Source: Macrostomum hystrix (Eukaryota > Animalia > Platyhelminthes). From it: DNA of 64,000 nt. This document shows, piece by piece, positions 1,060 through 37,600 of this stretch. The translations under genes were made by a program, and so were the position numbers. The stretch covers positions 186,001 to 250,000 of the forward strand of contig CATNEN010000007.1 in NCBI GenBank assembly GCA_950097015.1. Direction: 5' to 3'. The notes beneath the pieces were generated by a model. That model ran no database searches and was not told where the DNA came from. It saw nothing but the letters and a program-made list of their open reading frames with translations. Every line of letters starts with the position of its first letter. Positions within the stretch are counted from its first letter, which is position 1.

Positions 1060-18261
<17,202 letters not shown>

Positions 18262-19992: not shown

Positions 19993-22900
19993 TTATCTGA
20001 ATATTGTCCGCAGTTGCTCCTGCGAGGGAGCCCGGATGCCAACAACTCGATCGGACGACGCCGCGCCGCCGCCGACCTCCGCCTGGGTGTCGGACAGGTT
20101 CTGCACCGCGTCCTCGCTGGTGGAGCCTTCGGACTGCGGGTAAATTAAATTTTCAGTAGAAGTTACGTCAGTAGATGTGTCAGTAGATGTGTCAGTAGAT
20201 GTGTCAGTAGATGTGTCAGTAGATGTGTCAGTAGATGTGTCAGTAGATGTGTCAGTAGATGTGCCGTTTGTTGTGTCAGTAGATGTGTCAGTAGATGTCT
20301 CAGTAGATGTGTCAGTAGATGTGTCAGTAGATGTCTCAGTAGATGTGTCAGTAGATGTGTCGGTAGATGTGTCAGTAGATGTGTCAGTAGATGTGTCAGT
20401 AGATGTGTCAGTAGATGTGTCAGTAGATGTGTCAGTAGATGTGTCAGTAGATGTGTCAGTAGATGTGTCAGTAGATGTTTCAGTAGATGTGCCAGTTTGT
20501 TGTGTCAGTAGATGTGTCAGTAGATGTGTCAGTAGATGTGTCAGTAGATGTTTCAGTAGATGTGTCAGTTTGATGTGTCAGTTTGATGTGTCAGTTTGTT
20601 GTGTCAGTAGATGTGTCAGTAGAGGTGTTAGTAGAGAGATGTCAGTAGATGTGTCAGTAGAGGTGTTAGTAGAGAGATATCAGTAGATGTGTCAGTTGAT
20701 GTGTCAGTTTGATGTGTCAGTAGATTTTTCAGTTTGGTGTGTCGGTTTGTTGTTGTCATTAGATGTGTCAGTTTGTTGTGCCAGTAGATATGTCAGGTCA
20801 ATCCCACGCTCACCTCTTTGACTTCCCTCTGTCGTCTCTCACGCTGCCGCTGACTCTCCCGATTCTCTTCCTCGAGTTCGCGGCGGATCTCTTTCTCCAG
20901 CTCGTCATCGTCGGACATCATCTTGTGCGACTCCTGGGGCCGAGTGAAAACGAGCAAGAATTTAACTTCTGCAGGCCTCAGAGACTGACAAGGAAGTGCA
21001 AACTCTACTCCCACACTATAGATTATAATACTCAGTCTTTTCTATTCAATATGCGAGCTATATCCCCATGCCTGCCCTTGTCCACCCACTCTACCCTTGT
21101 ACACCCACTCTACCATTGTCCATCCACTCTACCCTTGTACACCCACTCTACCATTGTCCACCCACTCTACCATTGTCCACCCACTCTACCATTGTACACC
21201 CCACTCTACCATTGTACACCCCACTCTACCCTTGTACACCCCACTCTACCATTGTACACCCCACTCTACCCTTGTACACCCACTCTACCATTGTACACCC
21301 CACTCTACCCTTGTACACCCACTCTACCATTGTCCACCCACTCTACCATTGTACACCCCACTCTACCATTGTACACCCCACTCTACCCTTGTACACCCAC
21401 TCTATCATTGTACACCCCACTCTACCCTTGTACACCCACTCTACCATTGTCCACCCACTCTACCATTGTACACCCCACTCTACCATTGTACACCCCACTC
21501 TACCCTTGTACACCCACTCTACCATTGTACACCCCACTCTACCCTTGTACACCCACTCTACCATTGTCCACCCACTCTACCATTGTACACCCCACTCTAC
21601 CATTGTACACCCCACTCTACCCTTGTACACCCCACTCTACCCTTGTACACCCCACTCTACCCTAGTACACCCCACTCTACCATTGTCCACCCACTCTACC
21701 TTTGTACACCCCACTCTACCCTTGTACACCCACTCTACCCTTGTACACCCACTCTACCCTTGTCCACCCACTCTACCCTTGTACACCCACTCTACCCTTG
21801 TACACCCACTCTACCCTTGTACACCCCACTCTACCCTTGTACACCCCACTCTACCCTTGCACAGCCCACTCTACCCTTGTCCACCCACACTAACCTTGTC
21901 TGTCTTAACCCAACCCACTGAAGCCTTCAACGCTACTCCAGCCGACCAGAACTTACCTCCAGGTGCTTCATGAGCACAGCCACTACGACATTAACCAGTA
22001 CGAACTGGGCCATGAGCACAAACACCACAAAGTAGATTGGTGCAAAAACTCCGGAAACGCAGCAGTTCTTGACGCAGCTGTCGCTGGAGTCGCACTTGCC
22101 GCGCAGCGTGTCCTTCATGATGCCGTTCCAGTTGTCGCCGGTGGCGATACGAAACAGAGTCAGGAAGGCCATGCCGAAGTTCTCAAAGTGAGCATGACGG
22201 CTGAGACCAACGCAGGGATTGTCCAGCGAGCATTCTGAAACCAAGTGGCGGAGCGGTCGGTAGCGACTTGCCTTGCAAATCAACTCACAATGTACAGTGA
22301 GAGACAGATGTACACCCCTGTGCATTAATATTTGTTGCATTGACTCACCCAGTCGACCGAAAAGCTCGACTCCCAGGGCAGCAAAGATGTAGAACAGCAG
22401 GAAGAAGAGCAGGCCGAGATTTCCCACCTGCGGCAGGGCCTGGATGACCGTGTCCAGCAGGGCCCTGATGCCTTTGGCCATCTTCAACAGCTTCAGCACT
22501 GGACGTGGCGGGGATAGGACCCACAGGTTTGGTTGCTATGGGTTAAAAGTGAATTATTGCAACTACAGAAACAGATTCTCACCTCTAGCGATCCTCAAAA
22601 CGCGCATAACTCTAATAATTGTGGGATTGATTGGGATAACTTTGGACTGCATCTCCTCCAGGATGATGCCGGCAATGGACAGCATGACAATGAGAATGTC
22701 CAACTGGTTCCATCTGTAACAGGAGCAAGTGGGGTTAGCAAAGTCTCTGATTGGTTGTTATTTTCGCCGCAAAAAAAGTCAGCCAGCCAATCAGAGAGCT
22801 TCTGTCACCTGTCCTTCATATATCTGGCCAGGCCCAGCGCGAAAACTTTAAAGATTGCCTCCACGATAAACACCGACGTGAAAACGTAGTTTGTGATTTT

Positions 22901-25900
22901 CAAACCCGTCTCGAGTTCCTGAAATTTAAATATGTACATATGTACAGTCACATCTGTCACTCCCCTCATTCCAACTTTCCCACCCTTCATTCAAACTTTC
23001 CCACCCTTCATTCCCACTTTCCCACCCTTCATTCCAACTTTCCCACTCTTAATACCAACTTTCCCACCCTTCATTCCAACTTTCCCACCCTTCATTCCAA
23101 AAACTTTCCCTCCCTTCATTCCAACTTTCCCACTCTTCATTCCAACTTTCCCACCCTTCATACCAACTTTCCTACTCTTCATTCCAACTTTCCCACCCTT
23201 CATTCCAACTTTCCCACTCTTCATTCCAACTTTCCCACCCTTCATACCAACTTTCCCACCCTTCATTCCAACTTTCCCACCCTTCATTCCCACTTTCCCA
23301 CCCTTCATTCCAACTTTCCCACCCTTCATACCAACTTTCCCACCCTTCATTCCAAAAACTTTCCCTCCCTTCATTCCAACTTTCCCACCCTTCATTCCAA
23401 CTTTCCCACCCTTCATTCCAACTTTCCCACCCTTCATTCCAACTTTCCCACCCTTCATTCCAACCATCCTCGCACCGGAGGCATCATATAGAACTCCATA
23501 GCCATGGTGATGACGTTAACGCCGATGATGGTGGCAATGACCAGGTCAAAGTACTTGCTGTCCACAAAGCGGTGCACGGTGGTTCGCCAGGGCGAGTAGT
23601 TAGCCCAATAGGGCACTGCCCGAATGCCTGCGTGGAATTGTGTGCCAGTTAAAACTAGGATTTCCGAATTCAAACCGAACCTAAAATTTATTAACCTAAA
23701 ACCTGAATTCCGAACACCCGATTAGCGAAATCCGAAACTTGAGACTTGACAATTAAACCCTAAAATTTGATATAAAATTTGATTTGAAAAAAACACGAAA
23801 CCTGAACCCTAAAAAACAAGCCACGAAACATGAAACCTAAAACCTGAACCCCAAAACCTGAACCTCTAAACATGAACCCCTAAACCTGAACCTCTAAACC
23901 TGAACCCCATAACCTGAACCCTAAAACCTGAACCCCAAAACCTGAACCCCAAAACCTGAACCCTTAAACCTGAACCCCTAAACCTGAACCTCTTACCCTG
24001 AACCTCTAAACCCGAACCTCTTAACCTGAACCTCTAAACCCGAACCTCTTAACCTGAACCTCTAAACCCGAACCTCTTAACCTGAACCTCTAAACCTGAA
24101 CCTCTAAACCTGAACCTCTTAACCTGAACCCCTAAACCTGAACCTCTAAACCTGAACCCCTAAACCTGAACCTCTAAACCTGAACCCAAAAACCTAAACC
24201 TGAACCTCTTAACCTGAACCTCTAAACCTGAACCTCTTAACCTGAACCTCTTAACCTGAACCCCTAAACCTGAACCTCTAAACCTGAACCTCTAGACCTG
24301 AACCTCTAAACCTGAACCCCTAAACCTGAACCTCTAAACCTGAACCCAAAAACCTAAACCTGAACCTCTTAACCTGAACCCAAAAACCTGAACCTCTAAA
24401 CCTGAACTCTAAACCTGAACCCCTAAACCTGAACCTCTTAGTGTCTTAGTGGTTAGTGGTTTTGCCACCAGACACCCCGACGAGAATCGTCGAATATCCC
24501 GACGATGCCGATGTTTTGTGATTCTGGATGTTGTTCCATCGGATAGAGCGGAAAATTTTAGCCCGTGTTCTGGACTTTCATGGCGGTTCATTGAATATTT
24601 TGAGAGATGCTGAAAAAATGAAATACCCCCTTGATCTTTCTACTGCAGTTGAAACCCGATCAGTTCCATCGAGACTCACGTCGCTTCTTCTTCTCCATCC
24701 GTCTGGCCCGCTTAGCAGCCCGCCGCGCCTTCTCCTCCTTCTCCTGGCTGGCCCGGCACTTGTGGAAGTTCTCAACCACCACGCCAACGAACATGTTGAG
24801 CACGAAGAATCCCACAAGCAGCAGGAACGAGATGAAGTACAGCAGCAGCCATTCGTTGTGATTCTCCTTTGGCTGCATGTCAACACCGACCGCGTCGATG
24901 CCAGTGTACATGATCTGCACCCAGCCGTCCTTGGAGGACAGGACGAACAGGGTCATCAGAGCCTGCGGGAGCGTTTCACAAACCTGTGAGACATGTTGTG
25001 AGATTTCGGGTTGGTGGAAGCACCCGGTTTTTAGCTGTTTAGAGCTTTAGAACCGGTAGGTGTACTTTAGCTAGGCGACAGTCCATGGACTGTAAGTTTG
25101 GTCCCTCCATCCCACTGGGTCCTTGGAATGGGTCTCGGGAGTCATGCGTGGTGTTTCTTGAAGTTTGGACCGACTAACATTTGTAGAATCAGTACTGATA
25201 AGTATAGATAACAACGGCAATCAGCTCGGTGAACAGGTTTGATTACCTGGCCAAGATTATCAAAGTTATACAGGTGTCTTTTCCAGGTGTTTCTCTTATC
25301 GGCCAGGCACTCGGTGACATTCGTCACCCGTTTCACATTGGGACCGTCGCAATAAAAGAATTTTCCTTTGAACAGCTGCACGCCAAGAATGCCGAATATG
25401 ATGAAGAAGGTGCAGCAGATGAGCACAATGTTGCCAATTGGTCTCAGCGAGGACAGCAGAGTCTGCACCACCAGTTTGAGCCCGGGCGCACGGCTAATCA
25501 CTCGCAGAGGTCGCAAAGTTCTCAACAATCTGAATACGCGCAGAATGCCAAATATGCGACTACTGCTACCCACAAGTAGTGTGATGAGAATGTCAACCAG
25601 GGACACAACAACCAGAAGGCCGTCCATGACATTCCAGCCGCTGTGCAGGTAGGTATGAGTCCCCAGTACCAGGCCTTTGGATAGCACTTTGATCAGCATC
25701 TCCAATGTGAATATGAAGGTGAAAGCGTTATTGCTAACGCTGAGGAACTGCCGTTCCTAGTGAAGAGTTTTAGAATTCACATTAAAAGTACATAAAGTGA
25801 AAAAATAGCTACAACGGTTGGAACTGGCACTATATTCCCATTTCAGCCTCACAATGCTGTCCTGTGGTATCGATGGCCTCTCCATAGCCAGCGTGATGCA

Positions 25901-31800: not shown

Positions 31801-34570
31801 GTGCGAACGAATATTCGAACTCCCGACCTCTAGTGGTTTCGAGCTCTAAGCTCCAATAACTAGGCTACAACACAGCTTTCCCAACAGCATTATAGACCTG
31901 AAACACGGTGACCAGCGACCACATGATCGTGTCGAAGTTGGCCCTGTCGCAGGTGCAGTCGCTGTTGCTGTCCGCTCGCTCGGTGCAGCTGCAAGTGCTG
32001 CCATCGGCGTGCCAGCAGAACTTGCCGCCGAACAGGGTCATGCCGAGCACGCTGCGGGATGGATTTCGCATGGCTAAAATTTGCCTTCGCTACCCTCGTT
32101 TTCTACTTAGAGTAGTCATATGTGATTCGCGAATATTTAATTGGTATTTAATACCGGAAATAAATTATTTTTGTCTTTAAACTTTCTTTCCATAATACTT
32201 GTCCGATTTTTATATCAGAGATTATAGAATTAACATGAGAACATAGGAAAATTGTAACATAATATTATAGTTATTCTTTATAAATATGTAAGCTGGACAT
32301 TGAATGTGTATTCGATTATTATTTAAAATAAAAAGATTAAAGATGTTTTTAGTTGATACTCAAGATTTCAATAGTGATGAAATATCGTTAGGAAATTTTT
32401 TCTTCATTATTTGCTTTCAAATTCGTTTCAATCGTTTTTTGTTTATAAATTGTTTATAAATAAAGAGTCTGTCTCTATTTTTGTTAAATTCAAATCTAAC
32501 CTTGCTAGTTTTAAACAGTGCGTGACTCAATAAATAAAATTTATTCAAACACTTCAGACTAGTTATTTGGAATTTCGAAATTAATTTTCTAACGAATTTC
32601 ACACAATGACATGATGCTGTCCCGTTTCCGTTTTGATCCTATCCTAAAAAATGCAATTTGTTTATCTTAATTTTAGGATTAAAACAAAAAAATTAAATTC
32701 ACAATTTCAAACTCGCAAACCTAAAAATGAAGATGAATAGCACCAGTAGAGCAAAGAATGTGGCCACATTGTCCATTGTCTTGAGCATCACAAACAGCTG
32801 CTGCCGCAGGGCGGGCAGGAAGCGGACCAGCTTGAGAATCCGCAGCAGGCGGAAAGTCCGCAGCACCGACAGGCCGCTGTTGCCGTCCTGAATCAGCTCG
32901 AAGATGCTGGCCGGAGTCGGAGAGGAGAGGGAAACAGTTGAAAGTACACGCGGTCACGTGGTACTCAACAACTACTCAAATAGAGGTTTGAGAACATTTA
33001 AGAACATAAAAAAACACAAAAAAATAAAACAAATCTAGTTTGGCAAGTGGCAAAGCAGCAGCCATTGCTCTGTCTAACAGGTCATTGCTCTGTCTAACAG
33101 GTCATTGCTCTGTCTAACAGGTCATTGCTCTGTCTAACAGGTCATTGCTCTGTCTAACAGGTCATTGCTCTGTCTAACAGGTCATTGCTCTGTCTAACAG
33201 TTCATTGCTCTGTCTAACAGTTCATTGCTCTGTCTAACAGGTCATTGCTCTGTCTAACAGGTCATTGCTCTGTCTAACAGGTCATTGCTCTGTCTAACAG
33301 GTCATTGCTCTGTCTAACAGGTCATTGCTCTGTCTAACAGGTCATTGCTCTGTCTAACAGGCCACTCATCTGTCTAACAGGCCACTCATCTGTCTAACAG
33401 GTCATTGCTCTGTCTAACAGTTCATTGCTCTATCTAACAGGTCATTGCTCTGTCTAACAGGTCATTGCTCTGTCTAACAGTTCATTGCTCTGTCTAACAG
33501 GTCATTGCTCTGTCTAACAGGCCACTCATCTGTCTAACAGGCCACTCATCTGTCTAACAGGTCATTGCTCTGTCTAACAGTTCATTGCTCTGTCTAACAG
33601 GTCATTGCTCTGTCTAACAGGTCATTGCTCTGTCTAACAGGTCATTGCTCTGTCTAACAGGTCATTGCTCTGTCTAACAGGTCATTGCTCTGTCTAACAG
33701 GTCATTGCTCTGTCTAACAGGTCATTGCTCTGTCTAACAGGTCATTGCTCTGTCTAACAGTTCATTGCTCTGTCTAACAGTTCATTGCTCTGTCTAACAG
33801 GTCATTGCTCTGTCTAACAGGTCATTGCTCTGTCTAACAGGTCATTGCTCTGTCTAACAGGTCATTGCTCTGTCTAACAGGTCATTGCTCTGTCTAACAG
33901 GTCATTGCTCTGTCTAACAGGTCATTGCTCTGTCTAACAGGTCATTGCTCTGTCTAACAGGCCACTCATCTGTCTAACAGGTCATTGCTCTGTCTAACAG
34001 GTCATTGCTCTGTCTAACAGGTCATTGCTCTGTCTAACAGTTCATTGCTCTGTCTAACAGGTCATTGCTCTGTCTAACAGGTCATTGCTCTGTCTAACAG
34101 TTCATTGCTCTGTCTAACAGTTCATTGCTCTGTCTAACAGGTCATTGCTCTGTCTAACAGGTCATTGCTCTGTCTAACAGGTCATTGCTCTGTCTAACAG
34201 TTCATTGCTCTGTCTAACAGTTCATTGCTCTGTCTAACAGGTCATTGCTCTGTCTAACAGGTCATTGCTCTGTCTAACAGGTCATTGCTCTGTCTAACAG
34301 GTCATTGCTCTGTCTAACAGGTCATTGCTCTGTCTAACAGGTCATTGCTCTGTCTAACAGGTCATTGCTCTGTCTAACAGGTCATTGCTCTGTCTAACAG
34401 GCCACTCATCTGTCTAACAGGCCACTCATCTGTCTAACAGGTCATTTATCTGTCTAACACTGTAACATCGGGGATATGACTCAGATGATCAGAAGTGTTC
34501 TTTGCAGATTCCAACTCAGTACATTGAAGGTCAATGTCAAGAGAAAACTTTCTCAATAAGTATCATCAAT

Positions 34571-34607
<37 letters not shown>

Positions 34608-37600
34608 ATAAGTATTGTTAAAACACATAATCTATCTGCTGAGCCCACAACTGCAGTCGACGCCTCACTCCTACAATGGGCCAGTTGAAATCACCTAAGT
34701 ATGACAATGCTGGCGTCGAACACGTTGAAGCCGCTGCTGATGTAGTTCACCAGGCCTTCGCCAACCAGTTTGAGCAGCATCTCAAGGACGAACACGATGC
34801 AGAAAACCAGGTTGCTGTACTCAATGAACTCAGTGAGCTGCGGCGGCTGTGGGTTGAAAATAGTGATGATAGATTTATTGGCTGTGGTTTGAAATCAGTG
34901 ATGATAGATTTATTGACTGTGGGTTGAAATCAGTGATGATAGATTAATTGACTGTGGGTTGAAATCAGTGATGATAGATTTATTGACTGTGGGTTGAAAT
35001 CAGTGATGATAGATTTATTGGTTGTGGGTTGAAATCAGTGATGATAGATTTATTGGCTGTGGGTTGAAATCAGTGATGATAGATTAATTGACTGTGGGTT
35101 GAAATCAGTGAGGATAGATTTATTGGCTGTGGGTTGAAATCAGTGATGATAGATTAATTGGCTGTGGGTTGAAATCAGTGATGATAGATTAATTGGCTGT
35201 GGGTTGAAATCAGTGATGATAGATTAATTGGTTGTGGTTTGAAATCAGTGATGATAGATTTATTGACTGTGGGTTGAAATCAGTGATGATAGATTTATTG
35301 GTTGTGGGTTGAAATCAGTGATGATAGATTAATTGGCTGTGGGTTGAAATCAGTGATGATAGATTTATTGACTGTGGGTTGAAATCAGTGATGATAGATT
35401 AATTGGCTGTGGGTTGAAATCAGTGATGATAGATTAATTGGCTGTGGGTTGAAATCAGTGATGATAGATTAATTGGCTGTGGGTTGAAATCAGTGATGAT
35501 AGATTAATTGGCTGTGGGTTGAAATCAGTGATGATAGATTAATTGGCTGTGGGTTGAAATCAGTGATGATAGATTAATTGGCTGTGGGTTGAAATCAGTG
35601 ATGATAGATTAATTGGCTGTGGGTTGAAATCAGTGATGATAGATTAATTGGCGGTGGGTTGAAATCAGTGATGATAGATTAATTGGCTGTGGGTTGAAAT
35701 CAGTGATGATAGATTAATTGACTGTGGGTTGAAATCAGTGATGGCACACTTGTTGAAACTGGACCCGCTGCCAGCGAGGAGGCAATTCTGCCCATACCGC
35801 TGACTCCTGAGCACACACTCACACAGGTTGTACATCTGCCCGACACTCATTTATACAGTTTCACAAACCCCTTGAAGGTCGGGGGTTCGATTACCGACTT
35901 CATTGGAAAAATTTGTGTTTAGCAAAAAACGTAACTCTGCACTGCTTCAGTTAATTTAGGGTGGGTGTGGCGTCCCCCCAGTCCATGGACTGAACAGCTG
36001 TACGCAGCCTTCAGATGCGCCGTGCAATAGCTGCGGCTGTGCTGTCGGCTGCACATCCAGCCCGATTGGGGCACGGGGTAGTTAATTATTAATCAACTAC
36101 TTTTACTCGCAGATAGAACAATATGAGAGTTTCATTTTTGTTTCCCGCATTGATTTTAGTCGCACCTGATCGTGATACTCGATGCCCATGCTGAAGGTGT
36201 TGATGAGGATGGCCACCAGAATGCCGCGCTGAAAGAATCGATGAACCACCAGGCGCTGAACGGACCTGCGCATCTTGCGGAACACTTCCAAGAGTGCTAG
36301 ACGAGAACAGGTGAGATAGAGGATGCGCTAGTCAAGCCAGATTACCAATCAATAGGCAGATAAATCAAGAAATTAATTAATCAATTTATTTATCAATCAG
36401 TCCTATGAATGAAAGAATGAATAAATTCAATGAATCAACGAAGCCAATCAGCTGACTATTCAAGTCAATCAATCAATTAATCAATCAATCAAGTCAATCA
36501 ATGAATTAATCAAGTCAATCAGTCAATCAATCAAGTCAATCAATGAATTAATCAAGTCAATCAATCAATCAATCAATCAATCAAGTCAATCAATGAATTA
36601 ATCAAGTCAATCAGTCAATCAATCAAGTCAATCAATAAATTATTCAATTCAATCAATCAATCGATCAAGTCAATCAATGAATTAATCAAGTCAATCAATG
36701 AATTAATCAAGTCAATCAATGAATTAATCAAGTCAATCAATGAATTAATCAAGTCAATCAATGAATCAATCAAGTCAATCAATGAATCAATCAAGTCAAT
36801 CAATCAATCAATCAATCAGTCAAGTCAATCAATCAACCAATAATCAAGTCAATTGATTAAGTCAATCAATTAAGCAACCAATCTATCCAATTAACCAATT
36901 AAATCAATTAAATCAATCCATCAAGCACTCACCATTTTCATCTGCAAAACTGTCAATCAAGTAAGATAAGCGGACAGGCAGGCGATCATCCAATCAATCA
37001 ACAAACTAACCAATGCAACATTCAATTAATGGATCAATTCCAGAGTATCATTCTCTCACCTGCCAGGTCGCAGCACGCCAGCGCAGAGCCGCAGCCCGCT
37101 GCCGACTGACCGCCAGCCGGACTGCTCGACCTTGGCCAGTAGCCTTCCATCGGCTGCTCGTCTGCTGAATTGAGAACAGAAATTGTGCCTCTCTGTGCTT
37201 GAAGGAGGAGCTGATGCACCCCAAACAATTCCTGAAGTGAAACTCATCGTCAAGCAGTCCCTGAAGTCCCGCTTATCCACACAAACAATCCCTGAAGTCC
37301 CGCTAATCCTCAAATCAGTCCCTGAAGTCCCGCTTATCCTCAAATCAGTCCCTGAAGTCCCACTAATCCTCAAATCAGTCTTTGAAATCCCGCTAATCCT
37401 CAAATCAGTCCCTGAAGTCCCACTAATCCTCAAATCAGTCCCTGAAGTCCCACTAATCCTCAAATCAGTCCCTGAAGTCCCACTAATCCTCAAATCAGTC
37501 TTTGAAATCCCGCTAATCCTCAAATCGGTCCCTGAAGTCCCACTAATCCTCAAATCAGTCTTTGAAATCCCGCTAATCCTCAAATCAGTCCCTGAAGTCC

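What the first reader, a model, noticed from the sequence alone, without database searches (positions are those of the whole stretch)
34695..35850. SINE 3' end runs into a 35-bp minisatellite whose last unit is the working 3' splice site of Cav3 exon 10
Seen: on the sense (-) strand a SINE fragment ends ...GTGCCATCACTG and continues without a break into about 25 copies of CATCACTGATTTCAACCCACAGCCAATTAATCTAT. Other SINE copies end CACCACTGCCCGCAGC (63580 region) or CATTGCCCGCAGCC (47660 region), so both halves of the unit resemble the SINE terminus. Each unit carries CTGAT (branch-point-like), a short pyrimidine stretch and CACAG|CC. The final unit supplies the acceptor CCCACAG|CCGCCG at 34847/34846. 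Inference: either a retroposon tail seeded an array that now provides the splice acceptor, or the acceptor itself was tandemly amplified up to a SINE microhomology. In both cases about 24 near-identical decoy acceptors precede the real one and must be skipped. CCCGCAG is also a common acceptor elsewhere in these genes, so part of the resemblance could be chance.
Basis: partly seen in the sequence, partly recalled or inferred. Interest (0 to 1): 0.8.

Follow-up and report, generated by a model that had tools for sequence, protein, structure and literature searches.

The report
Amplified splice-acceptor minisatellite in Cav3 intron
An intron of a T-type calcium-channel gene ends in about 25 tandem copies of its own 35-base splice-acceptor region, and only the last copy fits the protein. 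This is a clean example of a known kind of repeat, seen repeatedly in this genome, and the neighbouring SINE is more likely a bystander than the seed.

Summary
A 35-bp x 25.7 array (34845-35743, minus strand, 96% matches) runs from a SINE fragment to the AG at 34848-34847. Splicing there joins ...IEYHDQ to PPQLTEF..., collinear with human Cav3.1-3.3 and with three paralogues whose intron sits at the same point.

Corrections:
- 21 of the 25 upstream units keep the AG, not about 24.
- The SINE family does not end at the quoted motifs. It runs about 20 nt further and then into an (ATT)n tail, so the window's copy has lost its last ~32 nt and its tail.

The SINE-seed idea is weak. Unit-versus-tail similarity is borderline (p 0.03-0.13), the unit occurs nowhere else in the genome, and 0 of 29 other SINE copies carry a minisatellite at the 3' end.

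Arrays cover 37% of the window and elsewhere stop 32-71 nt before acceptors. This one is the extreme case: the intron's own branch-site/AG region, plus two exon bases, was amplified. That matches the "mirage" minisatellites of amphioxus, and it mirrors the human F7 donor VNTR.

The scan has already found such acceptor arrays on other DNA of this genome (s1-394535, s1-319808, s1-344305, s1-384927). I found no RNA evidence for this junction.

The parts
36166..36300 (-). 3' part of Cav3 exon 9 (domain II S1, ends ...IEYHDQ); the exon start was not fixed
   Evidence: Translation. Collinear with human IEYHEQ|PEEL through. Paralogue L062 reads ...IEYYDQ|gt.
36094..36165 (-). Only non-repeat part of intron 9: the donor GT (36165-36164) plus about 70 nt
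   Evidence: Sequence. In one search the genome-wide repeat match starts at query position ~75.
35868..36093 (+). Second SINE-like repeat ('TE2'), antisense to the gene, 5'-truncated, with an (ATT)n-type tail towards 36093
   Evidence: 1,608 first-look candidates, 40 scored at 75-94% identity. Alignment with L055. Weak T-arm-like Rfam hit below threshold.
35741..35853 (-). SINE1 fragment in sense orientation: 5'-truncated at about consensus position 190 of 329, and 3'-truncated at ...GTGCCAT, lacking the last ~32 nt and the (ATT)n tail
   Evidence: BLAST and alignments. Consensus from 20 copies.
34845..35743 (-). 35-bp minisatellite: 25 full units plus a 24-nt last unit. 21 upstream units keep the acceptor-like CACAG.
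   Evidence: TRF, unit table, unit unique in the genome.
34845..34879 (-). Exon-proximal copy, the working 3' splice region (AG at 34848-34847) plus the first two exon bases (CC). It is the only unit with CTGAT changed to CTATT.
   Evidence: Protein collinearity. Same intron position in paralogues.
34695..34846 (-). Cav3 exon 10 (domain II S1-S2 loop to S3), 152 nt, donor GT at 34694-34693
   Evidence: phmmer against PDB: Cav3.2 E 4.5e-19, Cav3.3 5.9e-17, Cav3.1 about 5e-15, with query residue 1 aligned.

Best explanation
The array is a locally born minisatellite made by tandem amplification of intron 9's own 3' splice region: about 33 nt holding a branch-point-like CTGAT, a weak pyrimidine stretch and CACAG, plus the first two exon bases. 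The exon-proximal copy is the original, working acceptor. The upstream copies are spliced-out intron DNA.

The sense SINE inserted just upstream earlier. Its last ~32 nt and tail were later lost at the array's 5' edge, at a 3-nt CAT overlap. The SINE is therefore a neighbour, not the seed.

Inferred, not shown:
- The last copy is chosen because it is the one next to the exon, through cross-exon definition from exon 10 and its donor 152 nt downstream.
- It may be helped by the two substitutions that give only this copy a longer T run.
- Use of any decoy adds 35n nt with an early stop, so errors would yield truncated or NMD-prone transcripts.
For: - The array and its exact end, 2 nt inside exon 10.
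- The acceptor is fixed by collinearity with human Cav3 structures and by the same phase-0 intron before a CC codon in three paralogues.
- The unit occurs only at this locus.
- The rest of the intron is ~70 nt of unique sequence plus two SINE fragments, so the ancestral 3' intron end can only lie within the array. Paralogue L062 keeps a 92-nt intron here.
- The SINE copy lacks its 3' end.
- 0 of 29 other copies carry a minisatellite on the 3' end, while arrays lie within 0-5 nt of the 5' end in 2 copies and within 52 nt in 4.
- Other arrays in this gene stop 32-71 nt before acceptors and 11-115 nt after donors. This one is the extreme of a local process.
- The edge unit is the most diverged and the central units are identical, as the amphioxus paper describes for array boundaries (PMC3087553).
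- All 21 decoys give a stop within 13-44 codons.
- Precedent: amphioxus 'mirages' (PMC3087553) and the human F7 IVS7 VNTR (PMC1557585).
Against: - Only 2 exon bases are shared with the unit, and only in 14 of 25 units. That alone is a 1-in-16 coincidence.
- The unit shows a borderline resemblance to SINE tails (p 0.03-0.13). This includes CAGCC followed by CAATTA in the same order as in the SINE, once 7 nt are removed.
- The paralogues' acceptor regions do not resemble the unit, so there is no outgroup for the ancestral sequence.
- No RNA evidence was obtained for this junction or for decoy silence.
- No yUnAy motif lies within 35 nt of the real AG. The nearest CTGAT is 48 nt upstream with a decoy AG in between, so the selection mechanism is not explained in detail.
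Confidence: 0.6

Rival explanations
1. Chimeric unit. The SINE inserted about 22 nt upstream of the acceptor. The amplified 35 nt is the SINE's AT-rich tail (the 11-nt AATTAAT... part) plus the ancestral 24-nt intron end. The SINE thus contributed part of each unit but not the acceptor.
For: - The unit's CAGCC+CAATTA... segment matches the SINE's ...CAGCC(7 nt)CAATTATTATT in order.
- Mean score over 19 tails gives p 0.03.
- SINE tails in this family do expand: L028 has an 8-mer run and L021 has (ATT)10.
Against: - The signal rests mainly on one AT-rich 6-mer.
- p rises to 0.05-0.13 without the shared CAT or with the maximum statistic.
- A boundary deletion is still needed, because the SINE's own TGCCCGCAGCCCTCCTGC segment is missing.
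Confidence: 0.2
2. SINE-seeded array. The whole unit is the diverged last 35 nt of the SINE. A microhomology (CAGCC) deletion then fused one unit to the exon, so the working acceptor is retroposon-derived.
For: - The SINE consensus carries an acceptor-like CCCGCAG|CC.
- All four paralogues have CAG|CC at this junction, so a 5-nt microhomology exists.
- The unit versus one variant copy in the window gives p 0.01.
Against: - Only about 55% identity to the consensus tail, against about 87-93% for the rest of the copy.
- The variant used for the best match is rare: 3 SINE copies in the genome.
- The last unit's TTTTCAACCCACAG does not resemble the SINE's CCATTGCCCGCAG.
- It needs an exact replacement of an ancient, conserved junction.
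Confidence: 0.1
3. The decoys are used. The array acts as a copy-number-dependent splicing sink or an NMD-coupled regulator of Cav3 output.
For: - 20 of the 21 decoys are identical to each other over the 23 nt before the AG and differ from the real site at only two of those positions.
- No RNA structure hides them (z +1.2).
Against: - In amphioxus, mirage structures are reported not to interfere with regular splicing (PMC3087553).
- The F7 pseudo-sites stay silent (PMC1557585).
- An earlier follow-up in this genome (s1-394535, not checked here) reports RNA joining only the last copy.
- Arrays differ between paralogues, so there is no conservation.
Confidence: 0.1
4. Assembly artefact: the array's presence or length is wrong.
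For: Tandem arrays are error-prone in assemblies, and no reads were available.
Against: Units carry an ordered pattern of variants, including a repeated two-unit block (units 13-14 and 21-22), and both junctions are clean. Such arrays are ubiquitous in this assembly.
Confidence: 0.03

Closest known systems
[quoted passage not shown] 2002, as described in PMC3087553)
   Same: An intronic minisatellite adjoining an exon. Units carry the splice signal (Adh3 units are 10-72 bp). Authentic splicing is reported as undisturbed. The boundary unit is excluded from homogenisation.
   Different: Here only 2 exon bases are in the unit, whereas the mirages clearly include exon sequence. The host is a different phylum. 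One side is flanked by a truncated SINE. No RNA or polymorphism data exist for this locus.
Human F7 intron 7 37-bp VNTR, whose first unit spans the exon 7 boundary (PMC1557585)
   Same: A minisatellite of near-identical period (37 vs 35 bp) whose exon-proximal unit is the authentic splice site. The other copies are identical, functional-looking pseudo-sites that stay silent.
   Different: F7 duplicates the donor and the first copy is used. Here the acceptor is duplicated and the last copy must be used. The F7 selection rule was shown by 50 constructs; nothing has been tested here.
Other acceptor arrays noted by this scan in the same genome (s1-394535, s1-319808, s1-344305, s1-384927)
   Same: The intron's own 3' splice site is amplified in tandem and the last copy is the real acceptor.
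   Different: Those units mostly include tens of exon bases (59 nt in SPOP, and a 69-nt unit in the GABA-B-like gene). This one stops at +2 and abuts a SINE. I did not re-check those reports.
Retroposon-tail-derived micro/minisatellites, e.g. Alu poly(A) tails seeding microsatellites (from my own knowledge, not checked here)
   Same: A SINE in sense orientation is directly followed by a tandem array. Two of 29 family copies do show short tail-derived repeats.
   Different: The array does not start at the tail, because the tail and the last ~32 nt are missing. Similarity of the unit to the tail is borderline.

Membership tests
Mirage-type minisatellite (amplified intron-exon boundary) | Tandem array inside an intron that directly adjoins an exon | tested here: met
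   The array 34845-35743 ends at or inside exon 10.
Mirage-type minisatellite (amplified intron-exon boundary) | Repeat unit spans the boundary (splice signal plus exon bases) | tested here: inconclusive
   The AG is kept in 21 of 25 units. Only 2 exon bases (CC) are shared, in 14 of 25 units, which by itself is a 1-in-16 chance.
Mirage-type minisatellite (amplified intron-exon boundary) | The exon-proximal copy is the authentic site and regular splicing is kept | tested here: inconclusive
   Protein collinearity and paralogue intron position support the last AG. No transcript evidence was found.
Mirage-type minisatellite (amplified intron-exon boundary) | Length instability or polymorphism | not testable with these tools
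   There is one assembly and no reads.
SINE-tail-seeded minisatellite | Array begins at the element's intact 3' end or tail | tested here: not met
   The copy stops at ...GTGCCAT, about 32 nt plus the (ATT)n tail short of the consensus end.
SINE-tail-seeded minisatellite | Unit alignable to the tail better than chance | tested here: inconclusive
   p 0.13 and 0.09 against the consensus. p 0.03-0.05 for the mean and 0.07-0.13 for the maximum over 19 tails. p 0.01 against one hand-picked variant.
SINE-tail-seeded minisatellite | Recurs at other copies of the family | tested here: not met
   0 of 29 copies have a minisatellite fused to the 3' end. 2 of 29 have short tail repeats. The 35-bp unit is unique in the genome.
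tRNA-derived SINE (the flanking element) | Short, non-coding, high copy number, simple-repeat tail | tested here: met
   329-nt consensus, about 1,500 first-look candidates, (ATT)n tail.
tRNA-derived SINE (the flanking element) | tRNA-like Pol III head | tested here: inconclusive
   Box A-like and box B-like motifs can be read in the consensus head. ARAGORN and Rfam find no tRNA.
Cav3 (T-type) calcium channel alpha-1 | Best similarity to Cav3 rather than Cav1/2 or Nav across the exon | tested here: met
   Cav3.2, 3.3 and 3.1 are the top hits (E 4.5e-19 to 6e-15), ahead of Cav2.3 and Nav. Exon 11 hits are named T-type alpha-1G.

The most novel reading that the evidence does not exclude
The recurrence of acceptor-region arrays in this genome is not just a side effect of very frequent intronic minisatellites. 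It would reflect either a mutational mechanism targeted at 3' splice regions, or an unusually strict exon-proximal rule of 3' splice-site choice in this animal that makes such amplifications neutral. Loci like this one, with 21 sequence-identical decoys and copy-specific variants, would then be natural reporters of that rule.
Probability: 0.12. Interest if true: 0.7.

Novelty: new member of a known kind. Interest (0 to 1): 0.35.

Why it matters
The locus is a natural test of 3' splice-site choice. There are 21 intact copies of the acceptor region, 20 of them differing from the real site at only two of the 23 bases before the AG, and they sit in one of four Cav3 paralogues whose exons read open here. 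If RNA shows exclusive use of the last copy, that supports exon-proximal selection of acceptors, the mirror image of the rule shown experimentally for the F7 donor VNTR. It also shows how short ancestral introns (92 nt in a paralogue) grow to kilobases in this genome through SINE insertion and in-place minisatellite growth. As a single locus it adds an example rather than a new principle.

Tried and rejected
1. Transcript evidence.
- A word search with exon 10 alone (50 aa, by reference) found no candidate.
- A search with exon 11 (region 16-78 of its open frame) found 328 T-type fragments, but none above 89% identity. No RNA or gene model of this species was reachable at that length.
- The length window (0.55-1.75x) means longer transcript-derived proteins could have been missed.
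All searches were exon by exon, by reference, so the full-length search was left out.
- The large representative search was not used, because the protein's identity was not in doubt.

2. Outgroup. No relatives of this genome were available. The three paralogues have non-alignable introns.

3. tRNA head of the SINE. ARAGORN and Rfam found nothing. For TE2 there was only a sub-threshold tmRNA/T-arm-like hit.

4. RNA structure that might mask the decoys. There is none (z +1.17).

5. The CA(Y)CACTG variant as a SINE subfamily. Rejected: only 3 SINE copies in the genome have it, and the other 12 pattern hits are unrelated sequence.

6. Canestro et al. 2002 (PMC117041) is not held, so it is cited only through PMC3087553.

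7. Species identity was not established. 'Flatworm/macrostomid' comes from earlier notes only. Nothing here was taken for human.

Full report
**What is there**

On the minus (sense) strand the region reads as follows:
- Exon 9 ends at 36166 (...IEYHDQ).
- Intron 9 spans 36165-34847 (1,319 nt, GT...AG).
- Exon 10 is 34846-34695 (152 nt), followed by GT.

TRF reports a 35-bp array of 25.7 copies, 96% matches and no indels, at 34845-35743. In register it consists of 25 full units and a 24-nt last unit that ends CACAG|CC.
- All full units carry CTGAT.
- 21 keep the AG. Units 3, 13, 15 and 21 have lost it.
- Units 2 and 4-10 are identical, and the exon-side half is more variable.
- Only the last unit has CTGAT changed to CTATT.
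- A consensus unit can be read at window:35674-35708:-.

**The acceptor**

The first residue of exon 10 aligns with the P of PEELTNALE in human Cav3.2, Cav3.3 and Cav3.1 (E 4.5e-19 to about 5e-15). Together with exon 9's IEYHDQ, this gives a gap-free junction. The genome holds three further Cav3 paralogues, 74-80% identical over exon 10 and 80-84% over a domain III exon. In all three, a phase-0 intron sits at the same point before a CC (Pro) codon. The AG at 34848-34847 is therefore the acceptor that gives the conserved protein.

I did not build a joined exon 9+10 model. The searches were exon by exon, by reference. I could not obtain transcript evidence.

**The SINE**

The ~100 nt upstream of the array belongs to a family with about 1,500 first-look candidates. 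From 20 copies I derived a 329-nt consensus with box A/B-like motifs at the head. Its 3' end reads ...GTGCCAT TGCCCGCAGCC CTCCTGC AA(TTA)n. ARAGORN and Rfam do not call a tRNA in it.

The window's copy starts at about consensus position 190 and stops at ...GTGCCAT. It therefore lacks the last ~32 nt and the tail. Its junction with the array is a 3-nt overlap (CAT).

**Is the unit SINE-derived?**

| Comparison | Result |
|---|---|
| Unit vs consensus tail, shuffled units | p 0.13 |
| Unit vs consensus tail, random 32-mers of the window | p 0.09 |
| Mean score over 19 real tails | p 0.03 (0.05 without the shared CAT) |
| Maximum score over 19 real tails | p 0.07-0.13 |
| Unit vs the single variant copy at about 63.58 kb | p 0.01 before correcting for the choice |

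The resemblance sits in CAGCC and an AT-rich CAATTA..TAT. Identity to the tail is about 55%, against about 87-93% for the rest of the copy.

Three further points bear on this:
- The 35-bp unit occurs nowhere else in the 220-Mb genome.
- Among 29 other copies, none has a minisatellite on its 3' end and two have short tail repeats.
- Arrays lie within 0-5 nt of the 5' end in 2 copies and within 52 nt in 4.

A contribution of the tail to the AT-rich 11 nt of the unit cannot be excluded.

**Context**

TRF arrays cover 37% of the window (36 arrays) and 27% of the SINE loci sampled. Long introns of this gene are short introns filled by one array. For splice sites that I could place from reading frame and GT/AG:
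- Arrays begin 11-235 nt after donors.
- Arrays end 32, 33, 43, 62, 68 and 71 nt before acceptors.
- Only this array reaches the exon, at -2.

In the paralogues the same intron is 92 nt with no array in one case. In the other two it carries unrelated arrays that end 32 and about 75 nt before the acceptor.

Apart from its first ~70 nt, intron 9 here is entirely made of an antisense SINE fragment (35868-36093), the sense SINE fragment and the array. The ancestral 3' end of the intron, which must always have supplied a working acceptor, can therefore only be inside the array.

**Best reading**

The intron's own 3' splice region (about 33 nt plus 2 exon bases) was tandemly amplified. The exon-proximal copy is the original. 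The SINE's end was lost at the array's 5' edge by a small deletion at CAT. Confidence is about 0.6, with another 0.2 for a chimeric unit that includes SINE tail.

This is the 'mirage' type of minisatellite described in amphioxus Adh3 and globin genes. There, units of 10-72 bp or more span intron-exon boundaries, splicing is reported as normal, and boundary units escape homogenisation (PMC3087553). It is also the mirror image of the human F7 intron 7 37-bp VNTR, whose first unit holds the authentic donor and whose identical pseudo-donors stay silent (PMC1557585).

Earlier notes of this scan report the same kind of acceptor array at several other loci of this genome. For one of them (s1-394535), RNA is said to join only the last copy. 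I did not re-check those notes.

**How it works (inferred)**

- Twenty decoys share the same 23 nt before the AG and differ from the real site only at -15/-14. One more has a C>A change.
- The array RNA is unstructured (z +1.17), so masking by folding is unlikely.
- Selection most likely comes from position: the last copy is the one adjacent to exon 10 and its donor. The extra T run of that copy may help.
- Each decoy would add 35n nt and a stop within 13-44 codons, so mis-splicing would be non-productive.
- A weak point: no yUnAy motif lies within 35 nt of the real AG. The nearest CTGAT is 48 nt upstream, with a decoy AG 13 nt after it.

**Verdict**

The kind is already known and recurs in this genome, so this is a new member of a known kind, of moderate interest as a natural splicing test. 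Nothing in the window was taken for human.

Noticed in passing
window 14377-15642 and 33063-34459; also L061:1378-1468: Two separate arrays with different periods (19 and 20 bp) and opposite orientations share the exact 10-mer core TGTCTAACAG: 106 hits against 0.15 expected. The same core appears in an array of a Cav3 paralogue locus and in arrays near other SINE copies. This suggests a dispersed minisatellite family with a branch-point+AG-like core.
   Followed up: partly
G000 C38:28331374, C38:24695684, C34:1902399 (L062, L061, L063): There are four Cav3 paralogues in the genome. The intron equivalent to intron 9 is 92 nt and array-free in one, and it carries unrelated arrays in the other two, so arrays arose independently in the same intron.
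   Followed up: partly
window 35868-36093 (+): A second high-copy SINE-like element (about 1,600 first-look candidates) lies antisense in intron 9, head to head with the first SINE fragment. Both are 5'-truncated at their meeting point, which suggests a deletion across the junction.
   Followed up: partly
window 34838-34846: A second in-frame AG lies 9 nt inside exon 10 (CCGCCGCAG|CTC). It could serve as an alternative acceptor that removes PPQ.
   Followed up: no
window 22919-23475 and 20134-20813: These introns are almost entirely array. Only 11 or 17 nt remain after the donor, and 43 or 33 nt before the acceptor, which marks the minimal splice-signal footprints in this gene.
   Followed up: partly
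L028 (about 1440-1500) and L015 (about 600-700): One SINE1 copy has a tail turned into a short (TTGTTAAT)n run. Another has a 35-nt x 3.1 internal duplication of the SINE body.
   Followed up: no
window 34562-34607: A (GAT)15 microsatellite lies in intron 10, about 90 nt after the exon 10 donor.
   Followed up: no
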